64,000 bases of DNA, from positions 310,001 to 374,000 of the IMG/VR virus record IMGVR_UViG_3300032236_001850; one strand, 5' to 3'. The translations under genes and the position numbers were made by a program. Below the pieces are notes generated by a model that saw nothing but the letters and a program-made list of their open reading frames with translations, ran no database searches and was not told the origin of the DNA. Numbering within the stretch: the first letter of the stretch is position 1; every line of letters begins with the position of its first letter. Positions 22,711 through 55,345 of the stretch are shown here, one piece after another.

Positions 22711-22723
22711 AATTATATAAAAA

Positions 22724-23662: not shown

Positions 23663-23705
23663 AAACAAACTTTGCTAGCTATCTATAATAATTAAAAGCT
23701 AATTG

Positions 23706-24668: not shown

Positions 24669-24689
24669 TTTTTGTGCCTATTTTATTTA

Positions 24690-24697
24690 GATATATA
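24690..24697 (+). promoter_or_regulatory. GATATATA motif, putative late promoter
   Basis: Intergenic, 20 nt before ATG 24718. Confidence 0.55.
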
Positions 24698-24717
24698 ATC
24701 TGAATATAAATCGACAG

Positions 24718-26598: not shown

Positions 26599-26618
26599 AA
26601 AATTAATAAAATAGATAA

Positions 26619-30713: not shown

Positions 30714-31487
30714 TTAATCTAAATTGTTATCCTCTTTGTATTTTTCGTAGTTATCTGTTAACTCAACTAGAATAGGATTTCTTACTATATCCTCCCTTGT
30801 AAAAGTGAATGAATCACATTGACCTACTCCGTTTGCTATTTTTTCTGAAAATGTAAGTAGGTCTTTTTTTCTTGCTTTTAAATCCCATTGTGTGATGTCC
30901 CCACAAATAACTATTCTAGAATTCTGACCCATTCTGGTTACAACAAGCATTATTTGTCTAAGGTCTGCATTTTGTGCCTCATCCAAGATTAATATGGTGT
31001 CATCGAAAGTTCTACTTCTCATAAAAGCTAGTGGCTGCATATCAATTGTTTTTGTATCAGTCATTAGTTTTATTTTTTCCTTTGCTTTTAGTATTTTTTC
31101 CATGTTAGAGATATAACCTTCCATGTAAGGTGCTATCTTTTCATCAACTGATCCTGGAAGAAATCCAAGATTTTCCCCTGATTCAACTGCTGGTCTAGCA
31201 AGGATGATTTTAGAATGTTCTCCCTTTCTTATAAGATCTAGAGCTGCATAACACGCCACGAATGTTTTCGCTGTTCCTGCCGGTCCAGTGCAGACTGTTA
31301 AGAAATTACTTTCGATTGTTCTAAAAAATTTTAATTGTGAATCTGTGAATTTGATGTGATTGAAATCTTCCTTCTGTAGAATTGGCCCTTTTGGTAAACT
31401 ATCAACTTTAGAAGTTTTTGTTGATTTTGTTTGTTTTTTCTCCGTCTTAATTGGAGCTGGCTCATTTTTTACTTTTTTTCTTGGCAT
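30714..31487 (-). CDS. phoH: PhoH-like ATPase
   Basis: GPAGTAKT Walker A variant, RPAVESGENLGFLPG, LAFMRSRTF, ILDEAQN, GDITQWD, DIVRNP. Confidence 0.95.
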   Translation of the reverse strand: MPRKKVKNEPAPIKTEKKQTKSTKTSKVDSLPKGPILQKEDFNHIKFTDSQLKFFRTIESNFLTVCTGPAGTAKTFVACYAALDLIRKGEHSKIILARPAVESGENLGFLPGSVDEKIAPYMEGYISNMEKILKAKEKIKLMTDTKTIDMQPLAFMRSRTFDDTILILDEAQNADLRQIMLVVTRMGQNSRIVICGDITQWDLKARKKDLLTFSEKIANGVGQCDSFTFTREDIVRNPILVELTDNYEKYKEDNNLD

Positions 31488-38454: not shown

Positions 38455-41400
38455 ATGTCTGGATCAAAACTTTTTGATTATAATTCTTCATTTGCCGTTA
38501 TAAGAACAAACCCTAAGATTACTGGTAATCTTAGGGTAACTATTGATTCTTCGGGTAAGGTTTCTTTCAATTCAATGAACGCAAACCAAACTCTTAGTAA
38601 TGATAGATTTAAGAATTTCAACATAACTGGGGAGAATACATTTGCTCTTGATGTTTTTAATTTTTTCGATAAGGGTAAACTAGCAAATAATATAATATTT
38701 GATACAGCAAGATTTACTAGAGGTGACAGAGAAGTTTCCAAAATATTCTCAGATCAATATGATTTTTTTTATGCTAGTGGAGCATCCGCTTTAGCAGATA
38801 AAAATTACACTGAAACTTTTAGTTATTTTGCTCCTATTTGGTTAAAAAATGAAATACCCGATTACTTTGTGATCTTCAAAGTTCCTGGTCCGCTGAGTTA
38901 CATATATTCCAAAAATGAAACTGATATAAAGTCAGGTTTAAAATACAAGATCATAAAACACTATAACAGTGATTCTGATTTTGTTATATCATATGGGAAA
39001 ACACCATCAGGTGAACCCATATACATAAACAGTGGATCCATATTTACTGGATCCAGTGAATATCCTACTTATGAAATTGTTAGTGGCTCTGGTATAGTTT
39101 GTATATTTGATGAATTATATAATATTGATCTCGTTGATGATGTCACAACAACATTCAAGGAAAAAATATTACCAAATTGTTTAGCTATAAAAACATTTGA
39201 TCTTACTAAAACTTCTAAGATTGGTAAATATATCAGAAGTATAGTTTCTGATAAAAATTTTACAGATTCACCAATTGATGTAAATTGGGGACCAAATTCA
39301 TACACATATTATAATGGTGTTTCTGTATCACAGGGTTTATACACAAGAAAGGGTGAAATATTATCCGGATATTTTTCTAGTGATTCGTCAGATACTATGA
39401 TAGATTTTGAATCCTATGTCACTAATGGTTTTTCTAGAAATGGTGTAATCCCACCCAATATATTAAATCTTGAATTTCTTTTTGATGATGATGAGGCTGA
39501 TAACTATTCCATAAATAGATATTTTGGTATGTATGTTTCCAGAAACGATCTTAATGTATTGAGATCTAATGGAGAATTTTATTATAAATTCAAGGACCTT
39601 GATGGTAATGAGAATTTACCCAAACCAACAAGAGATGCTTTTGGATATTATTATAATACTGAAAGTTATGGGATAACTGCAGATTCTGGTGTTAGATTAT
39701 TTTATGAAAAAGACATTAGTGATGGAAGTAGTCCTGGCGTATTACCTGGATCCGATAATGTTAACATATTGGATTCCAATAAACTTTATTATATAACGGA
39801 TAAGAATGGTAATTTTTACAGTCTCAAAAGGGATGAAGACTATGTTAATTTTGGTGGTAATTCTCCTAAATATGCATACGGGCCTTATGACGAATTAACT
39901 GGTACATTTGGTACTACTGGTTCTAATTTTATTTCAACTATGGGAAGTTTTGTTATACAAAATAAAAAAACTGATCTTCTTAATTTCACTGGAATAACTG
40001 AAAAAATATCAACCATTCCAGCAACACATGCAACGACGCCAGGTAGAGCTTATGCTGAAATTAAATTTCTTAAAAGTTATGATAAAATAAAACCTGTAAC
40101 GTTTAGACTGTATTGGCCGAATGGTAAGAATAAGGAGGGTAATAAAAGATTTGATGTAGTTTCTTCTGCGGATCTTTCTGCTGTTCTTGTATGGATTGAT
40201 GGATCTTATTACTCAACCGGATCCTCCTTTTATTTCAATGCAGCAACAGGCAAGACTAGTGATGTTGCTAGCGCTTTTTCCGGTGTTATTAATGATGTTG
40301 ATAGTGTAACTTGGGATGCTGGTGTAAACCTCGATTCCTCCGTAATCAGGCTTAGAGATTACGGAGAGTATGGAAATAATTCATATTCAATAGCGGTTTT
40401 TGATGATTACGATGATTTTTTATTAAGATTTAAAGGTGATTGGTCAAATAGTAAAACTTACTATCAAAATGAAATTGTTTTGTATAATAATATTTTTTAT
40501 TATGCCTCAACTACAATTTATCCATCGTATCAGGGTCCTGGTACATATACATCCTTTTGGATAACATATAATGGATTCAATAACGATGGATATATTGAAA
40601 TCAACGGAACAGATGCCTCCATATATAATGGTCCAGTTAACTTTGTAGGTGGAACTAGAAAATCTGATAGCAGATTAATATTTCCGAGTACCTACTTGGA
40701 TTTTATAAAACCTGGTGATTTTATAAATACCAAGGCTGGTTATACAAAGGTTAATTCAATAACAAGATATATTGACACACCTCAGAGAGATCCGATAAGT
40801 GATAAAATAATTGGATTTGAAAATTTTACCTATAATTATGTTTTAAATATAGATGATAACATTGAAATTGATCTGGGTTACGATAAATCTTTTAATGTTT
40901 ATAAATCTGCTAAAATTAATTTAGGTGTATTTACATTTTTTGACGTTAAGGAATTCGATTTTGATTTCTGGAGTTCCGATTATGGGTACACACCAACTCC
41001 TGAAACATATAAATATTTTCAGATACCAACGGGTGTTACCGGAATAATTAAACCAAATGTACCATATTTGGTTAAGCAGGGACAGGTTGAATATGCTGGA
41101 ATCGTTTATCCACAGAGTGGAAGTGGATCAGTTCAAACATCCAATCTTTTTTATGGCGCCACTGGATACACATCAATAAAAAATGCAAGACCTGATTTAT
41201 TTAAGGAACTTATAGTTATTCCTGCTGAATATTCTGATATCTACTATGATTCATCAACTGATATAATTTATGGAGCAACAGGAAGTCCAATAGGATATAA
41301 TAAAGATCTTGATACATTTAATGGATTTATAGGAATACAGGATATTTCGCCAAGTTCTGTTGGTATAGATCCATCCAAAATACAAATATTTAATAGAGGT

Positions 41401-44004
41401 AAATTAGAAACTGAATATCAGTATTTGAATGAAAACTACAGCACTAGTCTTTCAAATGTTTCTAGAATTGTGCCCTTTATAAACAAGTGGGTTTATACTG
41501 ACGGTACTGATGCTAGAGGCAATGGGTATAGATTAAATTCAAGTCCTGCCTTTTCGCCAACAAATTTTTCTCCGAGTTTCGATAAGAATAATTCCGATTC
41601 CAGATATCTTACCCATGAATGGTTCTTATTAGAACAGCCTCCTAGAAATTTTCCAATCGAGGCTATGAAAAACCAAAATAGTTATCTGCCTGGAAAAATA
41701 GATTTGGATCTGGCTATAGGTGATGGTAATTATTTAGAATCTTATTTTACTGTTGAACCCTCCGATTATCCTCTGGAATTTAGAGATGATAAATCTTACA
41801 CGAAGGAATTGTTTACTACATTCACGTATAACAAATCTAGTGGCTTTTACGAGACCCTTTTCAGAGGAGCTAAGATTGTGCTTAAAAAAAGATCAAATCT
41901 CTCTAATAGTGTCTCAGATTCGTTAGACAGATATATTCCAAAATATAGAAACTATGAGGATTATAAATTTGCTGCTATATTAAGACCAATAGTAGAAAAT
42001 GATGATGTAATACAAGATCCTGTTAGTTATAGAATAATTGAAAATCAAAACCAAAAATTTATACTGTTTGTTTGTGATGTTGTGATGAGGGATTACAAAT
42101 CCCAGGGAGTTGGTTACACTGGAGGAACTGGGGGTGATCCAATATTGGATTATACTCTTCTTTATTCAGTTAACAATAAGGAAAAACTAACATATCCTAT
42201 GGTTCCTGGTTCTAGACTTTATGAGATATCGGACATTAAATTAAGTTCAGCTCTGGATCTTTCTGTTGGATCAGGATCTGTTGTAAATACAACAACGGGT
42301 GGTAAAGTTAATATAATATCTAGTTCAACTTACGATACCGATCTAAGGGAAGAAATTCACACATTCTTCAGTGAAAATTCAGCTAATGCAACTTCTGGTC
42401 CATCTGCAACTGGACCTGGTAGTTTTTATGTGACCCAATTTACACCTTTGGTAACATATCCTTGGCCAATAGGTGTTGGTCCAAATTATTTAGATTTTGC
42501 AAAAATAGTTCCACCAGGAACACCGAATGGTTCAGGAACATCTCCTGAATATACATTCTCTATAAACTTTTCATCTTCCAATCCGGTCATAGTTCCTGTT
42601 GGACCTCAGTCAATTTATAGAAATAAACCGGTTTTCCAAAAATCAGGAGGTCTGGGTTATTATAGTTCTATACTTCAGAGAATATCACTTTCTGGTATTG
42701 CCTCTAGAGTAAATACCAATTCTTCGTATATTAAATATGAAACTTATAAGGATACTGGTGTAGTTTATAATGATTTTGAATTTCATATGGATAAGCCTTC
42801 TAGGATAATAAAATCTAAGGGATCAAAATCAAGTAAATATTACGGAGGTCCACAAACTCTTGGTGAATCGGTAGCAACAGCATACACAATAAATGCAAAT
42901 CTTGATTTGCCGTCAACACTTTTAAGATACTCTGGTGGATATGAGCCTATCTTTAGAAAGATAATACATTTTGATAGAGATAAAAGTGATACAATAGCCC
43001 AAGTTTCTTATGATCCTTGGATATTCGATCTTTCTTTTAGAAATTGTAATTTTGCTCCATATAAAAGATATTTTGGACTATCTAGGAATCTATCTTTTAC
43101 CAAGGTTTCAAACGATAAGAACATATTATCATTGAGTCAAAATTTACCGGAAGGTCCAGTATATCCTCTTGTTGGTCAATCACCTATATGGAAAAAGAAT
43201 TTCAATGTTTTCTCATCCTCTTGGGATCCAGGATATTATGATAGATTTAGCGGACCTTTGACTTACGATAGAGTTGCAGGTACAAGATCTATGCAGGAGT
43301 ATAAAGGTTTCTTGGGTTCAAAGATAATGAAAACTCCTAACACTTTGGAGTTTGATAATTATATAACCCTGGAGATAGTTAGAAATGGAATATCCTATGC
43401 TATCTCTGATGTGGCCCTTATAAATTCCCAGATAGATTCATTTTTAAAATCCATACAAAATATTACTGTTGCTAATTCTGGAACAGGAATAGGTAGACCT
43501 GACCCATATGCTTCGGGTGTTGATTATGATAAACTAGATCTAAATCTTTTTCCTAATGCCGAACTTGTTTGGCAATATTTTCCTGATATAAATAAGGTAA
43601 AAGGTATTATAAGAATGGATAGAATGCTTAGCAGATATCTTCTAAATGATGGCATAAAACAGGTTTTTATAGATAACATTATATCCGAATTTGGTGTAGG
43701 TAATCCGGATTCCATAGATGATGATGTTGCAGAATATGTAAAAAATAACATTATTCCGTTATTCATGGGTGAAAATATGACACTTTTTGCTAAAAAAGAA
43801 TCATCTCCTAATGCACAGGAAACAAACAATACAAAATTAGTTAGAGGTGATATAGCAACAGCATATAAATACCAGGAAGGTTTCTATCCGGAATCTAATT
43901 TTAAATTAACAAAATTGACCAACTTAATATATACATTCGAATATAATCTAGATAACAATTATTTATATTCCTTATTGTTTAATTTAGAAATAACCAAGAT
44001 ATAA
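38455..44004 (+). CDS. very large putative virion/baseplate protein
   Basis: 1849-aa uninterrupted ORF; context only. Confidence 0.55.
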   Translation: MSGSKLFDYNSSFAVIRTNPKITGNLRVTIDSSGKVSFNSMNANQTLSNDRFKNFNITGENTFALDVFNFFDKGKLANNIIFDTARFTRGDREVSKIFSDQYDFFYASGASALADKNYTETFSYFAPIWLKNEIPDYFVIFKVPGPLSYIYSKNETDIKSGLKYKIIKHYNSDSDFVISYGKTPSGEPIYINSGSIFTGSSEYPTYEIVSGSGIVCIFDELYNIDLVDDVTTTFKEKILPNCLAIKTFDLTKTSKIGKYIRSIVSDKNFTDSPIDVNWGPNSYTYYNGVSVSQGLYTRKGEILSGYFSSDSSDTMIDFESYVTNGFSRNGVIPPNILNLEFLFDDDEADNYSINRYFGMYVSRNDLNVLRSNGEFYYKFKDLDGNENLPKPTRDAFGYYYNTESYGITADSGVRLFYEKDISDGSSPGVLPGSDNVNILDSNKLYYITDKNGNFYSLKRDEDYVNFGGNSPKYAYGPYDELTGTFGTTGSNFISTMGSFVIQNKKTDLLNFTGITEKISTIPATHATTPGRAYAEIKFLKSYDKIKPVTFRLYWPNGKNKEGNKRFDVVSSADLSAVLVWIDGSYYSTGSSFYFNAATGKTSDVASAFSGVINDVDSVTWDAGVNLDSSVIRLRDYGEYGNNSYSIAVFDDYDDFLLRFKGDWSNSKTYYQNEIVLYNNIFYYASTTIYPSYQGPGTYTSFWITYNGFNNDGYIEINGTDASIYNGPVNFVGGTRKSDSRLIFPSTYLDFIKPGDFINTKAGYTKVNSITRYIDTPQRDPISDKIIGFENFTYNYVLNIDDNIEIDLGYDKSFNVYKSAKINLGVFTFFDVKEFDFDFWSSDYGYTPTPETYKYFQIPTGVTGIIKPNVPYLVKQGQVEYAGIVYPQSGSGSVQTSNLFYGATGYTSIKNARPDLFKELIVIPAEYSDIYYDSSTDIIYGATGSPIGYNKDLDTFNGFIGIQDISPSSVGIDPSKIQIFNRGKLETEYQYLNENYSTSLSNVSRIVPFINKWVYTDGTDARGNGYRLNSSPAFSPTNFSPSFDKNNSDSRYLTHEWFLLEQPPRNFPIEAMKNQNSYLPGKIDLDLAIGDGNYLESYFTVEPSDYPLEFRDDKSYTKELFTTFTYNKSSGFYETLFRGAKIVLKKRSNLSNSVSDSLDRYIPKYRNYEDYKFAAILRPIVENDDVIQDPVSYRIIENQNQKFILFVCDVVMRDYKSQGVGYTGGTGGDPILDYTLLYSVNNKEKLTYPMVPGSRLYEISDIKLSSALDLSVGSGSVVNTTTGGKVNIISSSTYDTDLREEIHTFFSENSANATSGPSATGPGSFYVTQFTPLVTYPWPIGVGPNYLDFAKIVPPGTPNGSGTSPEYTFSINFSSSNPVIVPVGPQSIYRNKPVFQKSGGLGYYSSILQRISLSGIASRVNTNSSYIKYETYKDTGVVYNDFEFHMDKPSRIIKSKGSKSSKYYGGPQTLGESVATAYTINANLDLPSTLLRYSGGYEPIFRKIIHFDRDKSDTIAQVSYDPWIFDLSFRNCNFAPYKRYFGLSRNLSFTKVSNDKNILSLSQNLPEGPVYPLVGQSPIWKKNFNVFSSSWDPGYYDRFSGPLTYDRVAGTRSMQEYKGFLGSKIMKTPNTLEFDNYITLEIVRNGISYAISDVALINSQIDSFLKSIQNITVANSGTGIGRPDPYASGVDYDKLDLNLFPNAELVWQYFPDINKVKGIIRMDRMLSRYLLNDGIKQVFIDNIISEFGVGNPDSIDDDVAEYVKNNIIPLFMGENMTLFAKKESSPNAQETNNTKLVRGDIATAYKYQEGFYPESNFKLTKLTNLIYTFEYNLDNNYLYSLLFNLEITKI

Positions 44005-44006
44005 TT

Positions 44007-45548
44007 ATGCCGGTAACCAATATAAAATTTATAAATTATAGTGACGGTCAAAATCTAGCAATAGATAAAATAAACCACAATTTTGACGAAATTGTAGAAG
44101 CCCATGGTGGATCTGTTGGAGAAACTGGACCTAGTGGGGATAGAGGACCAATTGGAAGTAATGGTTTAATTGGACCGACTGGAAATGATGGTCCAAGGGG
44201 AACCAAATGGTTTGTGCAGGGAATTATGCCATCAACAACACCCGGAAATTCTGTGGTTTATGGAGATTATTGGGTTAATAATGGGGATAGTTTAATTTAT
44301 CAATTTGGTCCTACTGGATGGAATAGCACAGGATATAGTTTGTCGTCTTCCGGTAATATATTTAATGATGTTACCTCATATTTTACTAATGGAGGAACAG
44401 GAATTTCTGTTAAATTTGATCAGGTTTCACCCGAAAATTATACTTTTATAATTTCGGATAAATCTGCTCAGTCTGGAATAATTAACGAGAAGCTAGCAAA
44501 ATTCCTTATTTCCACAGATACCTCCGGAGATCCTTCGGCTCTTCTTGAATTCATGAAAAGTGATTTGATTTTAAGCAACGCTGGAGATTATGCATTACAT
44601 CCAACTTTCTCGTGGGCTACCAGTTTACCAACTGATAACTCGTTGAAGTTTGATGTTCCTGGTGGATCGTTATTAATAGGAGCATCCGGTGGATTTTCCT
44701 CGAATTCACAAAAAATTGATGTCTCTGCAGGTTCTGCTATAGATATAAATTACGGAGCAACTTCTGGATCTGGTATATCTGCAACTGGTGGAATCAATAT
44801 CATTTCATCAAATCCAACAAACGGTGTTTTTAATATACTAAGTGATAATTTAAGTATAACTGGTGGACATGCATCCTTTAAAAGTAGTGTAGAGTTAAAC
44901 GGAAGTCCAAGTGGTAATTCTCCATCAGTTGAACTCATCATTGGTGGGACATCAGGTTTAAGAACAAGAAGAACAGCAGATAATTTTAACACCATATCAA
45001 ACAGTGTATATAATGTTTCTCTTGAAACACAAGCTGATAAGGAATTCTACATAAACACAAAGGGTAAAATAAGAACTAAAAAACTTAAAACAGGTGTGAC
45101 TTATCAAAGTTATCAGAATTCAGCATTTAGTTCCGGTGGAACAAATTGGTATTTTATATCAAGACCTGGTGGTCCAGTTCAATCTACTGTTATTAAAAAT
45201 GGAAATACTGTTATAGTAACAATAAATGAACCTAACCCAATAGCAAATTTTGGTATTGGTTTGTATAGTGATCCGCTTTATTCTTTATGGGGTCCTGGAT
45301 CAATAGACAATGGACAAGCCATTGATATAAGTGTTTACTGTAGTCCAGATTTAAACCAAGGATCCAATACTCTTTTTAAATATATTGGTGTTGGTACAAC
45401 TGGTGGTGTGGTTCCCAAAGTAACTTTACCTACTCCAGCATCAGCTGTTGATTTTACTATTGTCAAGGGTGTAACTGGTAGTACCACAACAGTTTATTAT
45501 AAAGCTTATACTAGTGCTGGAGGATCTGGAGGATCTTTTACAGTTTGA
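44007..45548 (+). CDS. collagen-like tail fibre protein, paralogue 1
   Basis: KINHNFD, then 10 Gly-X-Y triplets (44109-44198), GTKW...GDYW. Confidence 0.7.
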   Translation: MPVTNIKFINYSDGQNLAIDKINHNFDEIVEAHGGSVGETGPSGDRGPIGSNGLIGPTGNDGPRGTKWFVQGIMPSTTPGNSVVYGDYWVNNGDSLIYQFGPTGWNSTGYSLSSSGNIFNDVTSYFTNGGTGISVKFDQVSPENYTFIISDKSAQSGIINEKLAKFLISTDTSGDPSALLEFMKSDLILSNAGDYALHPTFSWATSLPTDNSLKFDVPGGSLLIGASGGFSSNSQKIDVSAGSAIDINYGATSGSGISATGGINIISSNPTNGVFNILSDNLSITGGHASFKSSVELNGSPSGNSPSVELIIGGTSGLRTRRTADNFNTISNSVYNVSLETQADKEFYINTKGKIRTKKLKTGVTYQSYQNSAFSSGGTNWYFISRPGGPVQSTVIKNGNTVIVTINEPNPIANFGIGLYSDPLYSLWGPGSIDNGQAIDISVYCSPDLNQGSNTLFKYIGVGTTGGVVPKVTLPTPASAVDFTIVKGVTGSTTTVYYKAYTSAGGSGGSFTV

Positions 45549-45554
45549 TATATA
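45547..45554 (+). promoter_or_regulatory. GATATATA motif, putative late promoter
   Basis: Overlaps the TGA stop; 24 nt before ATG 45579. Confidence 0.5.
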
Positions 45555-45578
45555 GTCTAAGATAATTAAACTGTATAG

Positions 45579-47270
45579 ATGGCCCTTATAAAATTACTGA
45601 GAATAGAAGACGGAGATTCCCAAAAAAATCTAACTGACAAGTTAAATTATAACTTTAATAGATTAGTTACTTTTGGTGGTGGACCTTATGGGAGGATGGG
45701 TAAAAAAGGTCCCATTGGTCCAAAGGGACCAACCGGTCCTATTGGATCGCATGGAGATTCTGGTATAAGAGGAACAATCTGGACTGTTGGTGTTTGCCAG
45801 CCTTCCATTGCATCATCCATTGATGGTGATTATTGGCTTAATACTTATTCAGGTAATTTAGTTTATCAATTTTCTCAGAGCTCTGGCTGGAACTACTATG
45901 GATTCAATATAAAATCAACCGATTTATTTGATGTTTTTGGCCCACTTTCAACCTTAAGTGGTGTTAGTGCATATAGAGGATACTTTATAGCTTCACAAAC
46001 CCCTCTAAATTATACAGTTGTTATAAGTGATGCTGATCTTTCAAGCGGTGCAGGAGCAACTGCAGCAAATCTTTTTATTAATCCTCAGTATTCAAAATTT
46101 GTAATTGCGACTGATAGTAATAACACTTCGAAAAATTTATTGGAATTCAGTAAGGGTGACTACGCTGATGATGTGAGCTTCACTTCAAAAACACCAAAGA
46201 TTCTTTGGAATCCTGGTGCAACAGCTGACAGAGGTCCATATGGATTGTTATGGAATAATGACTATCTTAATATAAATGTCAGAAATTCCAGTTCTTCCAA
46301 TGGTTATTTTAATATAAAATCAAATACCGGTAATTTCTTAGTAAATTCTACCGGATTTAATTATTTTTCCAATGATCCCAACCAAATATCCAATCTTATC
46401 TCCTATGGAAATATAATTTTTGATTTAGGGTCGGGTAAAGTTCTTTTCTCTACTAAAAATATATCTTGGAACGTTGATAAATTTTATATAAATTCCTCGC
46501 TTGGTATATCAACTGGAGCATTAGAATCAGAATATGCTTTAGATCTTGTGTCCAGTGATTCTGGGTCTGGAAATCTTAGATATATTTACAATTCAAATGG
46601 TGTTAGAGATGCGGTGCTTATGAATTTCTATCAAAGTAGCCCATCATATTATCAATTATTTACTGTTACTGGTGATGGTGTAACATATGCTGATAAAACA
46701 GTAAGATCTGTACAAACACCGCAACAATTAACTCAAAGTGGAAGTAGTTCAACTTCCATAGGAACGGTTAATTGGGTTTCATTGGTTCCTTCGATAACAA
46801 ATACTGGATATATTAATGGCTGTTTTTATGTTAATAATGGTGCAGACCATATAATAGGAAAATCACCATCAGCATCGGCTGGTAATAGAGGGATATCAAT
46901 ATTTACACCAGCAACGGGTGGATATCTAAATAGCGAAAATGGTGGATGGCTAAATATCCTTGATAATTATGAAGCAATAAGCTTTACTGTAAGAAGCGAT
47001 AATCCAGGAGCAACTGGTAGTTGTTTTAAATACATAGGTCTAAATACAGATTATAATGAACAAACCTCACCTTCAACCCTACCTTCGCAATCGGATGTTA
47101 TTCTTGCTGGGTATGCAGCAAACATCGATATAACGATAATAAACATGACTGGATCTGGAGCAACGTTAAGTTCTAATAGATGGTTTAGAGTTTATTATTC
47201 TGCTTGGGGTGGAACTTTAAACACACCACAATGTGGTGTTATATCAACATATAATTCAATAGCAAATTAA
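45579..47270 (+). CDS. collagen-like tail fibre protein, paralogue 2
   Basis: KLNYNFN, then 10 Gly-X-Y triplets (45681-45770), GTIW...GDYW. Confidence 0.7.
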   Translation: MALIKLLRIEDGDSQKNLTDKLNYNFNRLVTFGGGPYGRMGKKGPIGPKGPTGPIGSHGDSGIRGTIWTVGVCQPSIASSIDGDYWLNTYSGNLVYQFSQSSGWNYYGFNIKSTDLFDVFGPLSTLSGVSAYRGYFIASQTPLNYTVVISDADLSSGAGATAANLFINPQYSKFVIATDSNNTSKNLLEFSKGDYADDVSFTSKTPKILWNPGATADRGPYGLLWNNDYLNINVRNSSSSNGYFNIKSNTGNFLVNSTGFNYFSNDPNQISNLISYGNIIFDLGSGKVLFSTKNISWNVDKFYINSSLGISTGALESEYALDLVSSDSGSGNLRYIYNSNGVRDAVLMNFYQSSPSYYQLFTVTGDGVTYADKTVRSVQTPQQLTQSGSSSTSIGTVNWVSLVPSITNTGYINGCFYVNNGADHIIGKSPSASAGNRGISIFTPATGGYLNSENGGWLNILDNYEAISFTVRSDNPGATGSCFKYIGLNTDYNEQTSPSTLPSQSDVILAGYAANIDITIINMTGSGATLSSNRWFRVYYSAWGGTLNTPQCGVISTYNSIAN

Positions 47271-47278
47271 TAAGGAAG

Positions 47279-50200
47279 ATGCATTTTAATACTAAATACA
47301 TATTTAAGGGTGATACCGAAAAAGAAATAATTGGAAAAATCAATTATAATTTTGATCAAATACTTTCATTTGCAATAGGTCCCGATGGTCATCCTGGTCC
47401 AAGAGGAGCAACAGGTATCTTTGGACCTGCTGGTAAAAGAGGTCCGAGTGGGAGCCCTGGAATTAGAGCATCGAAATGGTATAAGCAACCGACGGAACCT
47501 TCCGATGCACCAAATACTAATGATGTTTGGATAGACAATTCGGTTTCTGATGGAAATATAAAGATATTTAATTATCCTATAACAAATTACCAATGGCAGA
47601 ACAGCGGATATTCTTTTTTGAATTCCAAATATTTCCAATCCTATTCATATATCCAAGGACCTGGTGGTGCTACTGATAAATATGTGATAGGTTTTAAATA
47701 TCCTGGCGGTATAACAGGTTCAGCTAATACCTCTCTTTTAATAAGTGATTTCAATCTTAATTCTGTAAAATCAAATCCTAATAATTCCAAGGTTGTCGTA
47801 TCCACACAAGATCAAATTGATAGGCCCATTATGACTTTTTCTAAAAATGGTGCTATCTCCGATGATGTTCCATCATTCTATTGGAACTCGACAGGTAATA
47901 ATGCTGGATTGAAGTTTGATATTGGCGGTGCTTTTAGTGTAACAACAAATAATGATTTTTCTATAGACAGCGGACTTGCTAGAACCCTTATTACATCCAA
48001 TCTTTCAACATTTAGAAACAATCAGGGTGCATTCAATGTTCACGGTGATGGTGATTTTTTATTTGCTAGTAACATTGGTTTAGGTGTTGGCGGATTTTTA
48101 AGTATAACTACAAAAAATTTACAGGTTGATAATTCTTCTGTAAATCATTATGGCGGTGTAACTATAACATCACCTCTGACATCGACCTATATACTTAATT
48201 CGAAACCGAGTTCCCCGTCATATCTGAATGGAATATCTGCTAATATAAAAACGTCTGCTGTTATAAGAACCTTTGAATTTGAAGATTATACTGGGAATGC
48301 CATTATGTACGGTAAACCATCTGGATCTGTTTCTAGTGGAAATCTTGCACAGACCGTGTTTGGCACTAGCGGTGGTTTTACTGGTGGAACTGGAGGACCT
48401 TTTTCTTACCATGTTAGAAAGGTGAAAGAGGTTAGACAATCAACAACTGGATTAAGTGCTAGACAATATCTAACAACCACAACAAACAATCTAACCGATG
48501 TATTGGATATGTCAACTAATACTATATGGGAAAATGACATAATTCTTGCAACACCTACCGCATACAGTAGCGTTTCTAGTTCAAATTTAGGAAGTTTTAA
48601 AGTTGGTGACATAGATTCAAGCTTTAATTATTCATCGGGCTTAGACATTTTTGGGTCAGGATTTAAAAATTCTTTAACTGGAACCGGTGTTTATGATGCT
48701 GTTGTTAATGATGTTTTTAGATTAACAGATGGAAGCGGAAGCACAATATTTGCTGGAAATTTTAAATATTATAATGATCAGCCAGTGAAAACGGGATCTT
48801 TAACTAATGTATTAGGTCTGGTTAAAGTCAATTCTGATGGTACGATGGATACAACATTCAGAGCCAACATTTCTGCAATTTCTTTAGTTTCTGTTACCTC
48901 CATTAATGGTGCTGTAGTTGATGAGTCTGGTGGTCCTTACGGAAGTGGTCTTATTTATATTTATGGTTGCTTTACTCATACTACAAACAAAAATGGGATA
49001 TTGTGTTTAAATTTGGACGGAACACTATATAGTACGTTCAATTCAAATATGGGTATTGGAATAAATTCTGGTTCCTCTATATTCAAAGCTGGTATCGATC
49101 CAACAGGTACTAATTTATTTGCTGTTGGTGATTTTACTTATTATAAAACAACAACAACTTTTAGAAATAAGTTAATGAAGATAAAAATAAATGGAGCATC
49201 GGATGGATTACTTAATACATCATTTTTAAGTGGATCGACTTCGGTGGGACCTGGATTCGTTGGTTCAAGCAATATTCCCTACTGTTTTGATTTTTTGCCA
49301 AGTGGTAATATAATTGTTGGAGGATCCTTTAATTCCTTCAATTCATCAACGAGCGGTTCACCATTTACTATTAATTCTGTCATTGAATTGAATAGCAGCA
49401 ACGGTTTAAGAGTAACCACTGGAGGATTTGCTAATATAATTTATTCTACATTTATAGCATCTGATCCTATTGTTTCATCTATTAAATATAATAGTTATAA
49501 TTCCTATATCTATATAGGTGGAAGTTTTTCCAAAATAAATGGGACAGATTACGGAAGAATAGCAAGATTTACCATAACCGGAACAACTTTTACCCTCGAT
49601 TCAACTTTATCCTCAACTACAGGATTTAATGATATTGTTTATGATTTTGCTTTTGATGGTAGTAAAGTTTACGTTGGCGGAAGATTTACTTCTTATAGAG
49701 GAACATTATGTCCCGCTTTTGTTAAAATAAATAATAATGGATCAATAGATCCTACCGCTTCGATATATCACAACATTGTTAGTCCTAAATCAATTCAGCC
49801 AACATTTGAATGGACTGTTGGATTGGTTAAAAAAATGTACCTTAGTATAGTTGATAATGAATTCATGTATGTTGGTGGTTTTTTAAATAGTGTATTTTCA
49901 GCATCAGCTTCGAATAACGGAATTTATATCAAGGTACCATCATCCATAACACAAGATTATTTACCTGTTTATACCGATGGTACTACTACTAATTATAGAG
50001 TATTTCTTAATGATCCAGGCAATGATGCAAAGTTACACTATATAAAGGGATTGGTATTTGATGCTGGTTTACCGAATGCTGTGACGTCATATGTTGATTT
50101 TTCACAGGGTGCTACTGGTTGTCAATATGTGGATCTCATGTGGGTTTCTAAAACAAGTACAGCAAATATTGCTAATCCTAGACTTTTTTATAAAAACTGC

Positions 50201-51133
50201 GAGGGTTTTAGCGGTTATGTTGACTTTGGTTCTAATGGTGTTTATTCTACCGCACCTGCATCATCAAATGGTGGACAGAATGTAAGTGTTACCTGGGAAT
50301 TTAGTAGACAACAAACTGGATCGTGTAACATTTATAAAAATGGAACATCAATTTCAAATCTTCTTATAAATAAAACAACTTCAGGAAATGGTTCTTTACC
50401 ATACTCCATAGGAGATAAAATATATTCTAACGTTTCCGCTGGTGGTGCTAGCTCCGGTTATATCGGTGCCTATGCATCATTAAGAATAACGAAAACTTCA
50501 TTAAGTACTGGTATAACAACAACTGAATTCACACAAAGCATTACTGCAGATGTTGGTACTGTTAATAATTTCTCCAATCCTGTTACGTTAGTTGCTGGAT
50601 ATTCTTATTATATAGAATGTGTTGCACAATCTACACCAACAGGTGGAGGTTGTTGTTTTGTTGGTGATACTCTTGTAACCATGTATAATGGAAGTTTAAA
50701 AAATATTTCTAGTGTAATAGCTGGTGATCTTATATTAACATATAATGTTGAAACGGATCAATATGGAAAAGGTACTGTAACGTCAATAGAGTCACCTATA
50801 AAGGACGATATTATAGAATTCATACTATCCAATGGAAATTCAATAAAAGCCACAACTGAGCATCCATTTTGGGTTATAGGAAAGGGTTGGAGCTCTTATA
50901 GTCCTGACAGAACGATGTTTGATCATCAAATGGAAGTTTCTAAATTGTCCATTGGTGATGTACTATTGGACGAAAGTGGAAATGAAATTGAATTATTATT
51001 TATGAATAATGATGCTCAAGATCTTCAAAGAGTTTATAATATTCTTATGGAAGATGGAGATCACACTTATTATGCAAATGGGATATTGGTTCATAACAAG
51101 CTTCAGTATAACGATGGAAATGGTTTAGTATAG
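47279..51133 (+). CDS. collagen-like tail fibre protein, paralogue 3, with delta-60-like beta-propeller repeats and a C-terminal Hint domain
   Basis: KINYNFD, then 10 Gly-X-Y triplets (47378-47467); repeats such as VKVNSDGTMDTTF, IIVGGSFNSFN, VYVGGRFTSY; Hint blocks at the C-terminus. Confidence 0.75.
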   Translation: MHFNTKYIFKGDTEKEIIGKINYNFDQILSFAIGPDGHPGPRGATGIFGPAGKRGPSGSPGIRASKWYKQPTEPSDAPNTNDVWIDNSVSDGNIKIFNYPITNYQWQNSGYSFLNSKYFQSYSYIQGPGGATDKYVIGFKYPGGITGSANTSLLISDFNLNSVKSNPNNSKVVVSTQDQIDRPIMTFSKNGAISDDVPSFYWNSTGNNAGLKFDIGGAFSVTTNNDFSIDSGLARTLITSNLSTFRNNQGAFNVHGDGDFLFASNIGLGVGGFLSITTKNLQVDNSSVNHYGGVTITSPLTSTYILNSKPSSPSYLNGISANIKTSAVIRTFEFEDYTGNAIMYGKPSGSVSSGNLAQTVFGTSGGFTGGTGGPFSYHVRKVKEVRQSTTGLSARQYLTTTTNNLTDVLDMSTNTIWENDIILATPTAYSSVSSSNLGSFKVGDIDSSFNYSSGLDIFGSGFKNSLTGTGVYDAVVNDVFRLTDGSGSTIFAGNFKYYNDQPVKTGSLTNVLGLVKVNSDGTMDTTFRANISAISLVSVTSINGAVVDESGGPYGSGLIYIYGCFTHTTNKNGILCLNLDGTLYSTFNSNMGIGINSGSSIFKAGIDPTGTNLFAVGDFTYYKTTTTFRNKLMKIKINGASDGLLNTSFLSGSTSVGPGFVGSSNIPYCFDFLPSGNIIVGGSFNSFNSSTSGSPFTINSVIELNSSNGLRVTTGGFANIIYSTFIASDPIVSSIKYNSYNSYIYIGGSFSKINGTDYGRIARFTITGTTFTLDSTLSSTTGFNDIVYDFAFDGSKVYVGGRFTSYRGTLCPAFVKINNNGSIDPTASIYHNIVSPKSIQPTFEWTVGLVKKMYLSIVDNEFMYVGGFLNSVFSASASNNGIYIKVPSSITQDYLPVYTDGTTTNYRVFLNDPGNDAKLHYIKGLVFDAGLPNAVTSYVDFSQGATGCQYVDLMWVSKTSTANIANPRLFYKNCEGFSGYVDFGSNGVYSTAPASSNGGQNVSVTWEFSRQQTGSCNIYKNGTSISNLLINKTTSGNGSLPYSIGDKIYSNVSAGGASSGYIGAYASLRITKTSLSTGITTTEFTQSITADVGTVNNFSNPVTLVAGYSYYIECVAQSTPTGGGCCFVGDTLVTMYNGSLKNISSVIAGDLILTYNVETDQYGKGTVTSIESPIKDDIIEFILSNGNSIKATTEHPFWVIGKGWSSYSPDRTMFDHQMEVSKLSIGDVLLDESGNEIELLFMNNDAQDLQRVYNILMEDGDHTYYANGILVHNKLQYNDGNGLV
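50654..51097 (+). other. Hint (intein-like/BIL) autoprocessing domain, 148 aa, no endonuclease
   Basis: Block A CFVGDTLV, block B ATTEHPFW, blocks F/G RVYNI...HTYYANGILVHN; the +1 residue is Lys. Confidence 0.9.
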
Positions 51134-52482: not shown

Positions 52483-54792
52483 ATGGCATTTAGCACTTCA
52501 TCTAAATACGTTCAGATAACTCCATATTTACTTATGGAATATATGTATGCTGATCAACCTCAACCGGAGACACATTTTGTTAATACCGGTTCTTCGACTG
52601 TTGGTTACGATAAATTAGTAAATGGATTTAGATCGGGTGATGTACAGATTTTCAATCCAAATAATGATTATGATATAACGCATAATACAACACAGGATAG
52701 TGTTGTTAGGATAAGCGAAAACTCCTTTGTTACGTTAGATTCCAACCTTATCATACCATTCAATGATTATGCTGACGAATTAACTAATACTGCTAATTTA
52801 CCAATAGTATTTCCATCAAATCTTTTAGTTGTTTATGATAGCGTTAGGTATCATATTAGAGCTGGATATAATCTTGGAAACATAGATGGTCTTATAATGT
52901 CAATTGAATATACTGATGTAGATAATACACAAGTTCTTGTTTCACAGATACTTATAAAGAAAGGAACAAGCGAAGATTACAATCTAAATCCAAATCCTGT
53001 TACCATTGGTTCAAATATTTATGACAAGTATATTGAGATAAAAATCCCCAACCTTAGGGATATGAATAATAAATACCAAGCTGCTTCGTCTGTATTTAAA
53101 CCACAAACTTTAGCTGGACTTATTAGTCATAGTGGATTTGGATTCATATATAATGCTCCAATAAGAATAACTGCATGGCAAATCCAAAGTACTGTTGATT
53201 ATGCAGGTTATGCTAAATATGATTCTTCAAAAATAGCTACTCTTTCTCTCGAACAGGAAGATCAGTTTGGGAACATAGGTGCAACAATAAGACCTTCTGA
53301 CAGAGGTGAATTTTTTGAATTCTATGCAACTGATAATGAGGGATTCATTGAGGATTTTATATTGTTCCAAAATTCTTTGGGTAATGCTTATTATATAGGA
53401 CACCAAATCGAAGTGTTAGAACAGATTGGTGCATCACTTATAAGAACGTCACATTTTGATTCTGTACAAACAACAGCATATGATTCACCAAACTACTACA
53501 GACCGATAGTTAGGAATGCCGCTGTTGCAGCAAGTTTTACACTTAGATACACAATGACCCTTATTAATAGTGTCGATCAAAGTAGAACCATAAGAATATC
53601 TTCGTACACTTCAGCCAATCCAGCCGAATGGGGATTGAAAATAAAACCAATTCAGCTTAGTACTTTTCCACAGGTTCAGAAAATATACAATAGAATATAT
53701 TCTCAGCCAACAATAAACATGAACAGTAGTAACCCTGCTCCTAAGGAAATCCTAAAATACACTAATGTTTTTATAAATCAGAATTACGTTACAGCGAGCA
53801 TGGATAATCTTACTTTTACCAACAATTCATTAAGAGTTGATTCAGGTTCTTCCCAAACTGTTGCTATAGGTAGTGGTAAACTTACGATATCCATATCTCC
53901 ATTTGACACCTATATGAAATTCAAATTTATAAAAAGTGGACCTTCCGGAGATCCGGTTCCTATAGATCTTACAAGTTCTGGTGAATTCAATATTTCTTTT
54001 ATAGATCTTAGTGGTAGTAAAATACAAATACCTTCATTAAAGGATAACACCCTTGCAAATCCTGGATTGGGTGAGATTGCTTTTAAAATTGACGAATCAG
54101 CAGCTGGTAGAATTTTACAAATCAACGACCGAAGATTTTTCATAACAAATGGTGTTTCTATAAATCAAACAAACCTTTCTGCTACAGAAAAGAGCACAAT
54201 AACTGTGAATGCTGGAACAACAAATAATGTTTTAGAAAAAAGTATTGAAAGCGTTATAGCAGATAGAAGAGATGCTAATAAAGCTATAAAAGGTGCAAAT
54301 AACTATGTTAATACAGCAGCACAGAATAATATATTAACTCCTGTTAACAATTCAAATTCTGTTATATATTGGGGTTATTGGAAAAAGAACGGAGAGGAAG
54401 ATTTTGCTACCGGAGCTACTGGGTCTACAAGCTTACCTGTTTCTATGGGAAGCACAGGAGCAACAGCCGCTGCTGTTCCGAACCAAGTCAATGCTCCTGC
54501 GTCATCAATTAGATCGATAATGCCAGCAACGTCAGGATCAGGTACAGCGGGTATAGGTACGCCAACAGCAGCTTCAACAAATCAAACTCTAGCTGGATCC
54601 GCTTTAATAGCATCATTGAGTGCTGAAATGAACGGTTATAAAGCTATTGGTTGGGCTGATCAAACAGTAATAGATTATTTCCTTACTCCTGGTAAACCTG
54701 GAAGAATAAAATATCCAAATATAACAAAAGCTGATGTTGTTAAAGCTGGTAATGGTATATTAGCGCCTGCATCTTTAAAAAAATTAACTTAA
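52483..54792 (+). CDS. putative virion structural protein
   Basis: 769 aa, beta-rich, with an A/T/G/S-rich linker near the C-terminus. Confidence 0.5.
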   Translation: MAFSTSSKYVQITPYLLMEYMYADQPQPETHFVNTGSSTVGYDKLVNGFRSGDVQIFNPNNDYDITHNTTQDSVVRISENSFVTLDSNLIIPFNDYADELTNTANLPIVFPSNLLVVYDSVRYHIRAGYNLGNIDGLIMSIEYTDVDNTQVLVSQILIKKGTSEDYNLNPNPVTIGSNIYDKYIEIKIPNLRDMNNKYQAASSVFKPQTLAGLISHSGFGFIYNAPIRITAWQIQSTVDYAGYAKYDSSKIATLSLEQEDQFGNIGATIRPSDRGEFFEFYATDNEGFIEDFILFQNSLGNAYYIGHQIEVLEQIGASLIRTSHFDSVQTTAYDSPNYYRPIVRNAAVAASFTLRYTMTLINSVDQSRTIRISSYTSANPAEWGLKIKPIQLSTFPQVQKIYNRIYSQPTINMNSSNPAPKEILKYTNVFINQNYVTASMDNLTFTNNSLRVDSGSSQTVAIGSGKLTISISPFDTYMKFKFIKSGPSGDPVPIDLTSSGEFNISFIDLSGSKIQIPSLKDNTLANPGLGEIAFKIDESAAGRILQINDRRFFITNGVSINQTNLSATEKSTITVNAGTTNNVLEKSIESVIADRRDANKAIKGANNYVNTAAQNNILTPVNNSNSVIYWGYWKKNGEEDFATGATGSTSLPVSMGSTGATAAAVPNQVNAPASSIRSIMPATSGSGTAGIGTPTAASTNQTLAGSALIASLSAEMNGYKAIGWADQTVIDYFLTPGKPGRIKYPNITKADVVKAGNGILAPASLKKLT

Positions 54793-54796
54793 TCCA

Positions 54797-55345
54797 ATGT
54801 TATTAAACCCAAAAGGTAATAGTTTTTATTTTGTATTTCCTAAAGGATTTTTCCCTCCTAAAGTTGTTGATAAATATTTGCCTTATATCAAAAAACAACC
54901 TGTGCCCTTTGATAATATTAGTGATTACATGAATAGCACAATTCAGACTATAGGGTTTCCTAATATGACGATAGATTCAGTGGAACAGATTAGAAATCTC
55001 GGTAAGAAAATATCATACAAGAGTTCAACGAACGTTCAAGATTTATTCTCCCACGATTTTAGTATTGGATTTAAGAATGTCGATGGGTTTATAAACTATT
55101 TCATCATGCTCGATACCATATTACATTTTTTAAATTTTGAAAATCCGGAGTTGAGATTACCAAATTTGCCATTAAGAATAATGGACAATGAAGGAAATAT
55201 AGTAACATCCGTAACGTTCAAAGAGGTAATATTAACATCATATTCGGAATTGCAATTGAGTTATTCAGCTAATGCAAATCAATTCACACCATTTACTTTA
55301 GGTTTCAAATGTAACTACCTTGATATAGTTCTAGAAGCAAAGTAG
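54797..55345 (+). CDS. tail-tube-fold protein, T4 gp3-like tail completion protein
   Basis: 182 aa; IQTIGFPNMTI...FINYFIM...LRIMDNEGN..VTFKEV...L.Y...FTLGF fits the gp3/gp19 fold; lies near uvsY/uvsW as in other T4-like phages. Confidence 0.55.
   Translation: MLLNPKGNSFYFVFPKGFFPPKVVDKYLPYIKKQPVPFDNISDYMNSTIQTIGFPNMTIDSVEQIRNLGKKISYKSSTNVQDLFSHDFSIGFKNVDGFINYFIMLDTILHFLNFENPELRLPNLPLRIMDNEGNIVTSVTFKEVILTSYSELQLSYSANANQFTPFTLGFKCNYLDIVLEAK

What the first reader, a model, noticed from the sequence alone, without database searches (positions are those of the whole stretch)
44007..51133. Three adjacent fibre paralogues with identical collagen register: possible heterotrimeric collagen-like fibre
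Seen: all three ORFs have K(I/L)N(H/Y)NF, exactly 8 residues, exactly 10 Gly-X-Y triplets, then (G/A)(T/S)xW, with the triplets starting at residue 34-35. The X/Y residues differ strongly: chain 1 carries acidic residues (GET, GDR, GND), chain 2 is basic early (GRM, GKK, GPK). All three share a C-terminal module (VDFTIV..VYYKA / IDITII..VYYSA / VDLMWV..LFYKN). Chain 3 alone has an inserted beta-propeller and a Hint domain. Knowledge: characterised prokaryotic and phage collagen-like proteins are generally homotrimers. Inference: conserved length with divergent sequence suggests 1:1:1 co-assembly displaying one adhesin head per fibre.
Basis: partly seen in the sequence, partly recalled or inferred. 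Interest (0 to 1): 0.68.

Follow-up and report, generated by a model that had tools for sequence, protein, structure and literature searches.

The report
Tail-fibre gene triad, fixed collagen stalk
Three neighbouring genes of a 434-kb phage encode related tail-fibre proteins that all begin with the same short collagen-like stalk, but related phages with only one such gene have a stalk of the same length, so the shared length does not show that the three chains build one mixed fibre; that remains open.

Summary
ORFs A (44007-45548), B (45579-47270) and C (47279-51133) each have K(I/L)N(H/Y)NF, 8 residues, 10 Gly-X-Y triplets, then (G/A)xxW. They are paralogues: 28-36% identical over the first 200-260 residues. 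The window lies in a complete 434.5-kb huge-phage genome, between baseplate-size genes and a tail tube gene.

The 8+10 layout is a family trait. It occurs in 184 of 187 module-bearing ORFs from related viral contigs. About 50 loci carry the same A-B-C triad. About 25 carry a single fibre gene of 875-2008 aa, some with homotrimer-type domains (Peptidase_S74, Tail Collar).

A and B are homologous end to end. C shares only the N-terminal ~250 residues significantly. The window's C is a canonical C plus a DUF5122 propeller insert and a C-terminal intein-like Hint.

A heterotrimer is not excluded. An A+B+C fold passed its controls (0.65 versus 0.08). Its register, B-A-C, is also the best of six by charge pairing. 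No homotrimer fold could be run for comparison.

My estimates are separate homotrimers ~0.45 and heterotrimer ~0.35.

The parts
44007..45548 (+). Chain A, 513 aa: tail-fibre paralogue with the N-terminal anchor module and the A/B-type C-terminal beta-sandwich
   Evidence: ORF. Paralogy. Orthologues are 495-536 aa, all 'hypothetical' and metagenomic. The AF2 monomer has helix 15-31, a beta domain at 68-111 and a C-terminal beta-sandwich at 370-513 with pLDDT 80-90.
45579..47270 (+). Chain B, 563 aa: full-length paralogue of A
   Evidence: ORF. hhalign of A against B covers 1-503 / 1-545, E 2e-59.
47279..51133 (+). Chain C, 1284 aa: paralogue of A and B over the N-terminal ~250 aa, enlarged by a propeller insert, an extension and a Hint domain
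   Evidence: Canonical C in relatives is 502-605 aa.
44109..44198 (+). A collagen-like stretch, 10 Gly-X-Y triplets (residues 35-64)
   Evidence: Pfam Collagen E 7.9e-4, below the gathering score.
45681..45770 (+). B collagen-like stretch, 10 Gly-X-Y triplets (residues 35-64)
47378..47467 (+). C collagen-like stretch, 10 Gly-X-Y triplets (residues 34-63), followed by ASKW; the eleventh Gly is absent
   Evidence: By my count of the sequences listed, the eleventh position of C is Ala, Ser or Pro in about 22 of 36 distinct triads and is always Gly in A and B.
45189..45545 (+). A/B-type C-terminal module in A (residues ~395-513)
   Evidence: hmmsearch of the A+B profile against the whole genome hits only A (9e-33) and B (5e-44). 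Exactly two copies occur in all 50 triad loci and none in 23 single loci.
46827..47255 (+). A/B-type C-terminal module in B (residues ~417-559)
48644..49915 (+). Insert in C (residues ~456-879) holding a DUF5122 beta-propeller; the boundaries are approximate
   Evidence: Pfam PF17164, 5 stretches, E 6.9e-19. The insert is flanked by segments that align to short canonical C.
49916..50254 (+). Canonical C-terminal end module of chain C (residues 880-992, containing VDLMWV..LFYKN)
   Evidence: hhalign against the C-terminus of short C orthologues gives E 4e-41. Against the A/B module it gives only E 0.06.
50255..50653 (+). Extension domain of C (residues 993-1125), all-beta by a poor model; function unknown
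   Evidence: It is present in the long C orthologues L002, L004, L009 and L010. No Pfam hit. The AF2 model is unusable, pLDDT 46.
50654..51097 (+). Mini-intein-like Hint domain (residues 1126-1273): Cys1, a TxEH block and terminal VHN, followed by Lys and a 10-residue tail
   Evidence: PT-HINT 1.2e-8, Hint and Intein_splicing. TIGR01445 at 1126-1198 and TIGR01443 at 1252-1273. Alignment with L009 and L010.
38455..44004 (+). Conserved 1849-aa upstream neighbour (phrog_31887), a probable baseplate protein; it marks the syntenic slot of the fibre gene or genes
   Evidence: Its size is ~1820-1850 aa in most single and triad genomes, with outliers in both.
52483..55345 (+). Conserved downstream neighbours: a 769-aa protein (possibly the sheath, not shown) and the tail tube (182 aa)
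   Evidence: phrog_45 tail tube, E 8.8e-10. Both are colinear in relatives.

Best explanation
A, B and C are the products of one ancient triplication of a tail-fibre gene in a lineage of huge phages.

Every member of the family starts with the same N-terminal anchor, whether the genome has one gene or the triad. The anchor is a short strand, a helix carrying K-x-N-x-N-F, an 8-residue linker, exactly 10 Gly-X-Y triplets and a small Trp-rich beta domain. The fixed length is therefore an inherited constraint of the anchor. I infer that the way the stalk sits on the baseplate sets this length. It is not a mark of mixed assembly.

I think it most likely that each chain trimerises with itself, giving three kinds of fibre. 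A3 and B3 would be conserved structural fibres with a common distal beta-sandwich. C3 would be the variable, receptor-facing fibre. In this phage C carries a DUF5122 propeller. It also carries a terminal Hint domain that probably cuts itself off during maturation.

Shown here: the paralogy, the family-wide register, the synteny and the domain content. Inferred: the baseplate attachment, the homotrimeric state and the Hint self-cleavage.
For: - Paralogy over the N-terminal 200-260 aa. A and B are homologous over their full length.
- The 8+10 layout holds in 184 of 187 module ORFs.
- About 50 triads and about 25 singles occupy the same slot between the ~1830-aa protein and the sheath-like and tube genes.
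- Single-type contigs that are 79-85% complete hold one copy. Two triad genomes that are 100% complete hold three.
- Singles carry Peptidase_S74 (3.9e-14) or Phage Tail Collar (1.2e-24), which are domains of homotrimeric fibres.
- A tree holding A+B+C as one clade against the singles is not rejected and fits better (p-AU 0.82).
- C alone varies in length (502-1284 aa) and in accessory domains.
- Weak shape matches are all to phage fibre or spike proteins.
- Every characterised phage or bacterial collagen-like fibre that I know of is a homotrimer (from my own knowledge).
Against: - No homotrimer fold was run, so nothing here shows that A, B or C trimerise alone.
- Three separate fibres would need three docking sites where single-gene relatives need one. 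Yet the four proteins just upstream have the same sizes in a single-type genome. No extra protein was consistently found in triad genomes.
- A and B are unusually constant in length and rate for independent receptor-binding fibres.
- Each chain has its own conserved X/Y residues, and C has lost the flanking glycines. This would suit fixed positions in a mixed helix.
- Homotrimers score about zero net axial charge pairs, against +1.4 for the B-A-C mix.
Confidence: 0.45

Rival explanations
1. Heterotrimer. After the triplication the three chains each specialised for one of the three staggered positions of a single collagen-like fibre. The register is B leading, A middle and C trailing. Each fibre then shows one C head (propeller) and two conserved A/B modules, and occupies the same single docking site as the ancestral homotrimer.
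For: - The triad is kept together and in order in 36 distinct triads, apart from loci cut by contig ends and one B gene with a 1-nt indel. The three chains evolve in step, r 0.95-0.97.
- The A+B+C fold of residues 1-140 scored ipSAE 0.65 against a best control of 0.08. That mark was reached by 58 of 80 solved complexes and 2 of 110 mismatched pairs. The runs agree in at least 92% of contacts, and partner pLDDT is at least 73.
- The model's contacts imply register B-A-C. That same register has the highest net axial charge pairing of six: +1.42 against about -0.1 to +0.3 for four registers and for homotrimers, and 1.03 for C-B-A. Native triads beat partner-shuffled ones in 300 of 300 shuffles.
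- C Y7 (K/R) pairs with B X9 (D) in 25 of 36 triads. A Y4 (R/K) pairs with C X5 (Y/F) in 15 of 15 cases, against 4 of 21 otherwise.
- Triad chains carry charged and aromatic residues at chain-specific conserved positions, whereas the main clade of singles is GPQ-rich.
- Upstream baseplate proteins are the same size in single and triad genomes.
Against: - The equal register does not favour this reading, because singles have it too.
- The fold controls use unrelated proteins. Close cousins of a true partner are known to pass, and homotrimers were not tested.
- The charge signal rests mostly on one conserved K/D pair. Non-physical offsets reach 0.6-0.8 against 1.0 for that pair.
- Some clades have no such pairs: my reading of the L087 and L090 sequences finds none.
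- Independent contrasts number 1 to 3, p at least 0.25.
- I saw the C Y7-B X9 pair before scoring the registers.
- One to two salt bridges cannot specify composition on their own.
- The distal half of C is not detectably homologous to A and B and varies from 502 to 1284 aa.
- No natural phage or bacterial heterotrimeric collagen is known to me.
Confidence: 0.35
2. Segmented or branched fibre. A3, B3 and C3 are homotrimers joined to one another. The A/B C-terminal module serves as the socket for the next chain's N-terminal anchor, and C forms the variable tip, as in the T4 long tail fibre.
For: - A and B share a distal module that C lacks, and only C has a variable end.
- The module can be a separate polypeptide. 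In the L065 clade A is split into a 387-396-aa chain and a ~175-aa ORF carrying the module.
Against: - No copy of the module lies in any other protein of the genome, so the baseplate socket for the first anchor would be unrelated.
- Singles lack the module.
- No binding test was run.
Confidence: 0.08

Closest known systems
Complement C1q (A, B and C chains)
   Same: Three tandem paralogous genes. Each has a short N-terminal region, a collagen-like stretch in a common register and a globular C-terminal part.
   Different: C1q's heterotrimer is demonstrated, and all three chains end in homologous gC1q domains that select the chains. Here there is no C1q domain. Only A and B share a C-terminal module, the helix has 10 triplets, and the assembly state is untested.
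Homotrimeric collagen-like proteins of bacteria and phages (Scl1/Scl2, BclA, PRD1 P5, phage hyaluronidase HylP)
   Same: Short Hyp-free Gly-X-Y runs flanked by trimerising domains in surface or tail fibres. The only family matches of the collagen part are weak ones to Scl-type and phage tail-fibre models.
   Different: Those proteins are single genes with variable repeat numbers. Here the repeat number is fixed at 10 across a large family, and the gene is triplicated in one lineage.
Multi-fibre phages whose paralogous fibres share an N-terminal anchor (CBA120 TSP1-4, T4 gp10/gp11/gp12 cluster)
   Same: Adjacent genes for trimeric baseplate fibres, with related N-terminal parts and different distal parts.
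   Different: Those fibres are known homotrimers with mapped docking sites. Here neither is known, and the anchor contains a collagen helix.
Self-cleaving C-terminal domains of tail fibres (Peptidase_S74 intramolecular chaperone) and bacterial intein-like / pretoxin HINT domains
   Same: A C-terminal autoprocessing domain on a fibre. The single-gene relative LR756500.1 has S74 at this position. The window's C has a Hint with Cys1, TxEH and terminal HN.
   Different: Hint is a different fold and chemistry from S74. There is no +1 Cys/Ser/Thr (Lys instead), so splicing is not expected, and no toxin follows it as it does after PT-HINT.

Membership tests
Collagen-like triple-helix repeat (Pfam PF01391) | Uninterrupted Gly-X-Y repeats long enough for a triple helix | tested here: met
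   10 uninterrupted triplets in each chain. The Pfam scores of 16-20 bits are below the 27.2 gathering score because the run is short. The complex model has continuous inter-chain contacts over residues 34-68.
Phage tail fibre | Encoded in the tail/baseplate module | tested here: met
   The genes lie between large conserved structural proteins and a tail tube gene (phrog_45, 8.8e-10). The order is conserved in relatives.
Phage tail fibre | Recognised trimeric fibre domains | tested here: inconclusive
   There are none in the window's A, B or C beyond the collagen run. Single-gene relatives with the same anchor carry Peptidase_S74 or Tail Collar. Shape matches to T4 gp34, HylP and tailspikes are below significance.
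Phage tail fibre | Present in the virion at the baseplate | not testable with these tools
   The phage is uncultured and metagenomic. There are no proteomic or imaging data.
C1q-like heterotrimeric collagen | Three adjacent paralogous chains with the same collagen register | tested here: met
C1q-like heterotrimeric collagen | Homologous C-terminal chain-selecting domain in all three chains | tested here: not met
   A-B gives E 5e-17. A-C and B-C give E 0.11 and 0.26 for the last ~100-150 aa, and E 0.06-0.09 for the A+B profile against C. No C1q family hit.
C1q-like heterotrimeric collagen | 1:1:1 assembly of the three chains | tested here: inconclusive
   The A+B+C fold passed (0.65 against 0.08) but no homotrimer comparison was run. 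The charge and covariation signals are weak.
Intein / bacterial intein-like Hint domain | N-terminal Cys/Ser, block B TxxH, C-terminal His-Asn | tested here: met
   C1126, TTEH and VHN at 1271-1273. TIGR01445 scores 23.7 bits, just under its 24.5 cutoff. TIGR01443 scores 20.6 bits, over its 15.6 cutoff. PT-HINT scores 35.7 bits, over 27.7, when the C-terminal 292 aa are scanned alone.
Intein / bacterial intein-like Hint domain | Nucleophile (Cys/Ser/Thr) at +1 of the C-extein, needed for splicing | tested here: not met
   The residue after HN is Lys in the window and in L009 and L010, and K, I or V in other relatives. Cleavage is expected, not splicing.

The most novel reading that the evidence does not exclude
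The triad encodes a natural register-specific A-B-C collagen-like heterotrimer, with B leading, A middle and C trailing. It would have evolved from a homotrimeric tail fibre by triplication and would present one receptor-binding head per fibre. To my knowledge this would be the first heterotrimeric collagen outside animals and the first heterotrimeric phage fibre.
Probability: 0.35. Interest if true: 0.8.

Novelty: new variant of a known kind. Interest (0 to 1): 0.5.

Why it matters
Collagen-like phage fibres are known. This family is unannotated: all hits are 'hypothetical' and metagenomic. It is also unusual in two ways.

First, the collagen stalk has a fixed length of 10 triplets across very divergent huge phages. 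This points to a precise geometric role at the baseplate.

Second, one lineage has kept a three-gene version as a unit. If the three chains do co-assemble, this would be a natural model for how homotrimers become register-specific heterotrimers. It would also be a Hyp-free template for designing collagen heterotrimers.

The recurrent C-terminal Hint on chain C suggests an autoprocessing route for fibre maturation different from the S74 chaperone.

Tried and rejected
- DNA and protein searches of the deposited phage collection with the fibre region found nothing. Only the upstream protein linked the window to LR756500.1, the Lak phages, PTm1 and PAU.
- The regex count suggested some two-gene loci. 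All proved to be triads with variant motifs, contig ends or a 1-nt indel.
- A first tree placed the singles next to B. The AU test shows this is not robust: A+B+C held as one clade fits better.
- Independent-contrast tests of the candidate inter-chain pairs had 1-3 contrasts, so they have no power.
- A host-guest propensity scale recalled from memory gave only a small difference between singles (42.3) and triad chains (40.3-40.8). I do not rely on it.
- The AF2 monomer of A gave no significant PDB or Atlas fold match. The Z 3.3-3.8 likeness of residues 63-123 to collagen XV/XVIII trimerisation domains is below noise.
- The AF2 model of C 880-1284 was unusable, pLDDT 46.
- I searched the genome for another copy of the A/B distal module as a possible socket and found none.
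- I looked for triad-specific extra baseplate proteins and found none that were consistent.
- Literature searches found no description of this family, of heterotrimeric phage collagen fibres or of Hint-tipped fibres.
- The large representative-protein search, the sequencing-run tools and other genetic codes were not needed and were not used.
Full report
**Context.** The window is bases 310001-374000 of a complete virus genome of 434,509 bp. It has direct terminal repeats and about 33% GC, and nearly every gene is on the + strand. The 1849-aa protein just upstream of the finding is related to proteins of huge phages: LR756500.1 (462 kb), the Prevotella Lak phages, Tenacibaculum PTm1 and Sphingomonas PAU. 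Downstream lie a conserved 769-aa protein and a tail tube gene (phrog_45). The three ORFs therefore sit in the tail/baseplate module.

**The observation.** The three ORFs are A (44007-45548, 513 aa), B (45579-47270, 563 aa) and C (47279-51133, 1284 aa).
- Each has K(I/L)N(H/Y)NF at residues 20-26, exactly 8 residues, exactly 10 Gly-X-Y triplets, then GTKW, GTIW or ASKW.
- They are paralogues. A-B is 36% identical over 1-202 (1e-24), A-C 30% over 5-234 (1e-16) and B-C 28% over 9-257 (6e-16).
- Only these three ORFs in the genome have the full module. Other collagen-like ORFs elsewhere have different contexts and 5-37 triplets.
- Pfam finds a DUF5122 propeller and a Hint domain only in C.

**Relatives.** Two scans of viral contigs with the module, plus one with the upstream protein, gave about 130 loci.
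- In 184 of 187 module-bearing ORFs, all ten Gly positions after the 8-residue spacer are Gly.
- About 50 loci (36 distinct collagen triads) carry A, B and C adjacent and in the same order.
- About 25 loci carry one gene of 875-2008 aa with the same 8+10 layout at the same syntenic slot.
- Whole-contig searches confirm one copy in single-type contigs (79-85% complete) and three in two complete triad genomes.
- LR756500.1 and one IMG/VR contig have a single gene with 7 triplets.
- Singles carry Peptidase_S74 (3.9e-14) or the Phage Tail Collar domain (1.2e-24). Both are domains of homotrimeric fibres. A lone collagen-forming chain must in any case be a homotrimer.
- Holding A+B+C as one clade against 19 singles fits better than the free tree (p-AU 0.82). 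One triplication of a homotrimeric ancestor is therefore the simplest history.

The fixed length is a trait of the anchor module. The acidic-A, basic-B contrast is also not general: mean net charges are +0.4, +1.4 and +2.4.

**Architecture.**
- Profile comparison shows A and B are homologous end to end (E 2e-59). Their last ~100 residues alone give E 5e-17.
- C is significantly similar to A and B only over the N-terminal ~250 residues. The C-terminal halves give E 1e-3 to 0.26, although the best alignment is colinear.
- The A/B distal module occurs exactly twice in every triad locus, never in single loci and nowhere else in this genome.
- In one clade the module is a separate ~175-aa ORF after a shortened A.
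- Canonical C is 502-605 aa. The window's C is that protein plus three additions: an insert of ~420 aa with the propeller, a 993-1125 extension and the Hint at 1126-1273.
- The Hint has Cys1, TxEH and terminal HN but Lys at +1. I therefore expect self-cleavage, not splicing.
- Close relatives without the Hint end where it begins.
- Hint domains of two sequence types recur on C in many relatives and never on A or B.

**Homotrimers or a heterotrimer?** Several points favour a mixed fibre.
- The triad is inherited as a unit with no loss or gain, and pairwise identities of the three chains correlate at 0.95-0.97.
- Each chain has its own conserved, non-generic X/Y residues. The main clade of singles is GPQ-rich.
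- C has lost the glycines flanking the helix.
- A fold of A+B+C (residues 1-140, with alignments) scored 0.65 against a best control of 0.08. That mark was reached by 58 of 80 solved complexes and 2 of 110 mismatched pairs. The runs agree in at least 92% of contacts, and partner pLDDT is at least 73.
- The model's contacts imply register B-A-C. A simple count of axial charge pairs over 36 triads also ranks B-A-C first of six. It scores +1.42. Homotrimers and four other registers score about zero, and C-B-A scores 1.03. Native triads beat shuffled partners.
- The four proteins upstream have the same sizes in a single-type genome. No extra protein is consistently tied to triads. Three new docking sites are therefore not evident.

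Other points weigh against giving these much weight.
- The fold controls are unrelated proteins, and cousins of true partners are known to pass. No homotrimer could be folded because the cap is one job.
- The charge signal rests mainly on one K/R-D pair (25 of 36). Non-physical offsets reach 0.6-0.8, and some clades have no pairs.
- Phylogenetically independent contrasts number 1-3.
- I saw that pair before scoring the registers.
- The contact rules for the helix are recalled from the literature, not tested here.
- The distal half of C is unrelated in sequence to those of A and B and is very variable in size.
- No natural heterotrimeric phage fibre or bacterial collagen is known to me or was found in the literature.

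**Verdict.** My estimates are separate homotrimers 0.45, a B-A-C heterotrimer 0.35 and a serial or branched arrangement about 0.08. The rest is unassigned.

Noticed in passing
window 50654-51133; also the C genes of L005, L009, L010, L012, L013, L016, L017, L018, L023, L028 and L037: A C-terminal mini-intein-like Hint follows a Gly/Ser/Pro linker on chain C in many relatives. It comes in two sequence types (CF.GDT.. and CPTPDM..). All end in HN followed by K, I or V and a 7-18-residue tail. It is never found on A or B. The close relatives L002 and L004 lack it and end where it begins.
   Followed up: partly
L065:11202-11726, L066:11205-11729, L071:11138-11653, L077:11165-11710: In one clade chain A is split. 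A 387-396-aa chain carries the anchor, and a separate ~175-aa ORF carries the A/B C-terminal module (hmmsearch 1e-9 to 6e-11). The module can therefore act as a free subunit.
   Followed up: partly
L041:11594-13345: This B gene is 99.94% identical to that of L038 but has a single-base indel inside the collagen-coding part. This is either a frameshifted B or an assembly error.
   Followed up: partly
own genome G000:C1 107-123 kb and 230-233 kb (outside the window): There are several other collagen-like ORFs (1839, 1211, 1087, 277 and 214 aa) with runs of up to 37 GXY triplets and repeated 'STVPGP' breaks. They lack the KxNxNF anchor.
   Followed up: no
own genome ends (G000:C1 1-250 and 434300-434509): A Gly/Ser/Asn-rich repeat ORF (GSSGSN...) lies at both ends of the record, within the direct terminal repeat.
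   Followed up: no
window 17923-30713: The 1595-aa and 1364-aa ORFs match the two halves of one 2263-aa ORF in a single-type relative (G001). In the window three ORFs (312, 320 and 626 aa) lie between them. These are patchily present in other triad genomes.
   Followed up: partly
window 30714-31487 (- strand): This 257-aa ORF appears to be the only real minus-strand gene of the window. It fills the gap between two + strand structural genes. The other minus-strand ORFs in the list overlap + strand genes.
   Followed up: no
window 44007-44375 (A residues 63-123): The small beta domain after the collagen run gave weak shape matches to the trimerisation domains of collagens XV and XVIII (Z 3.3-3.8). 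This is below the noise level of the search.
   Followed up: no
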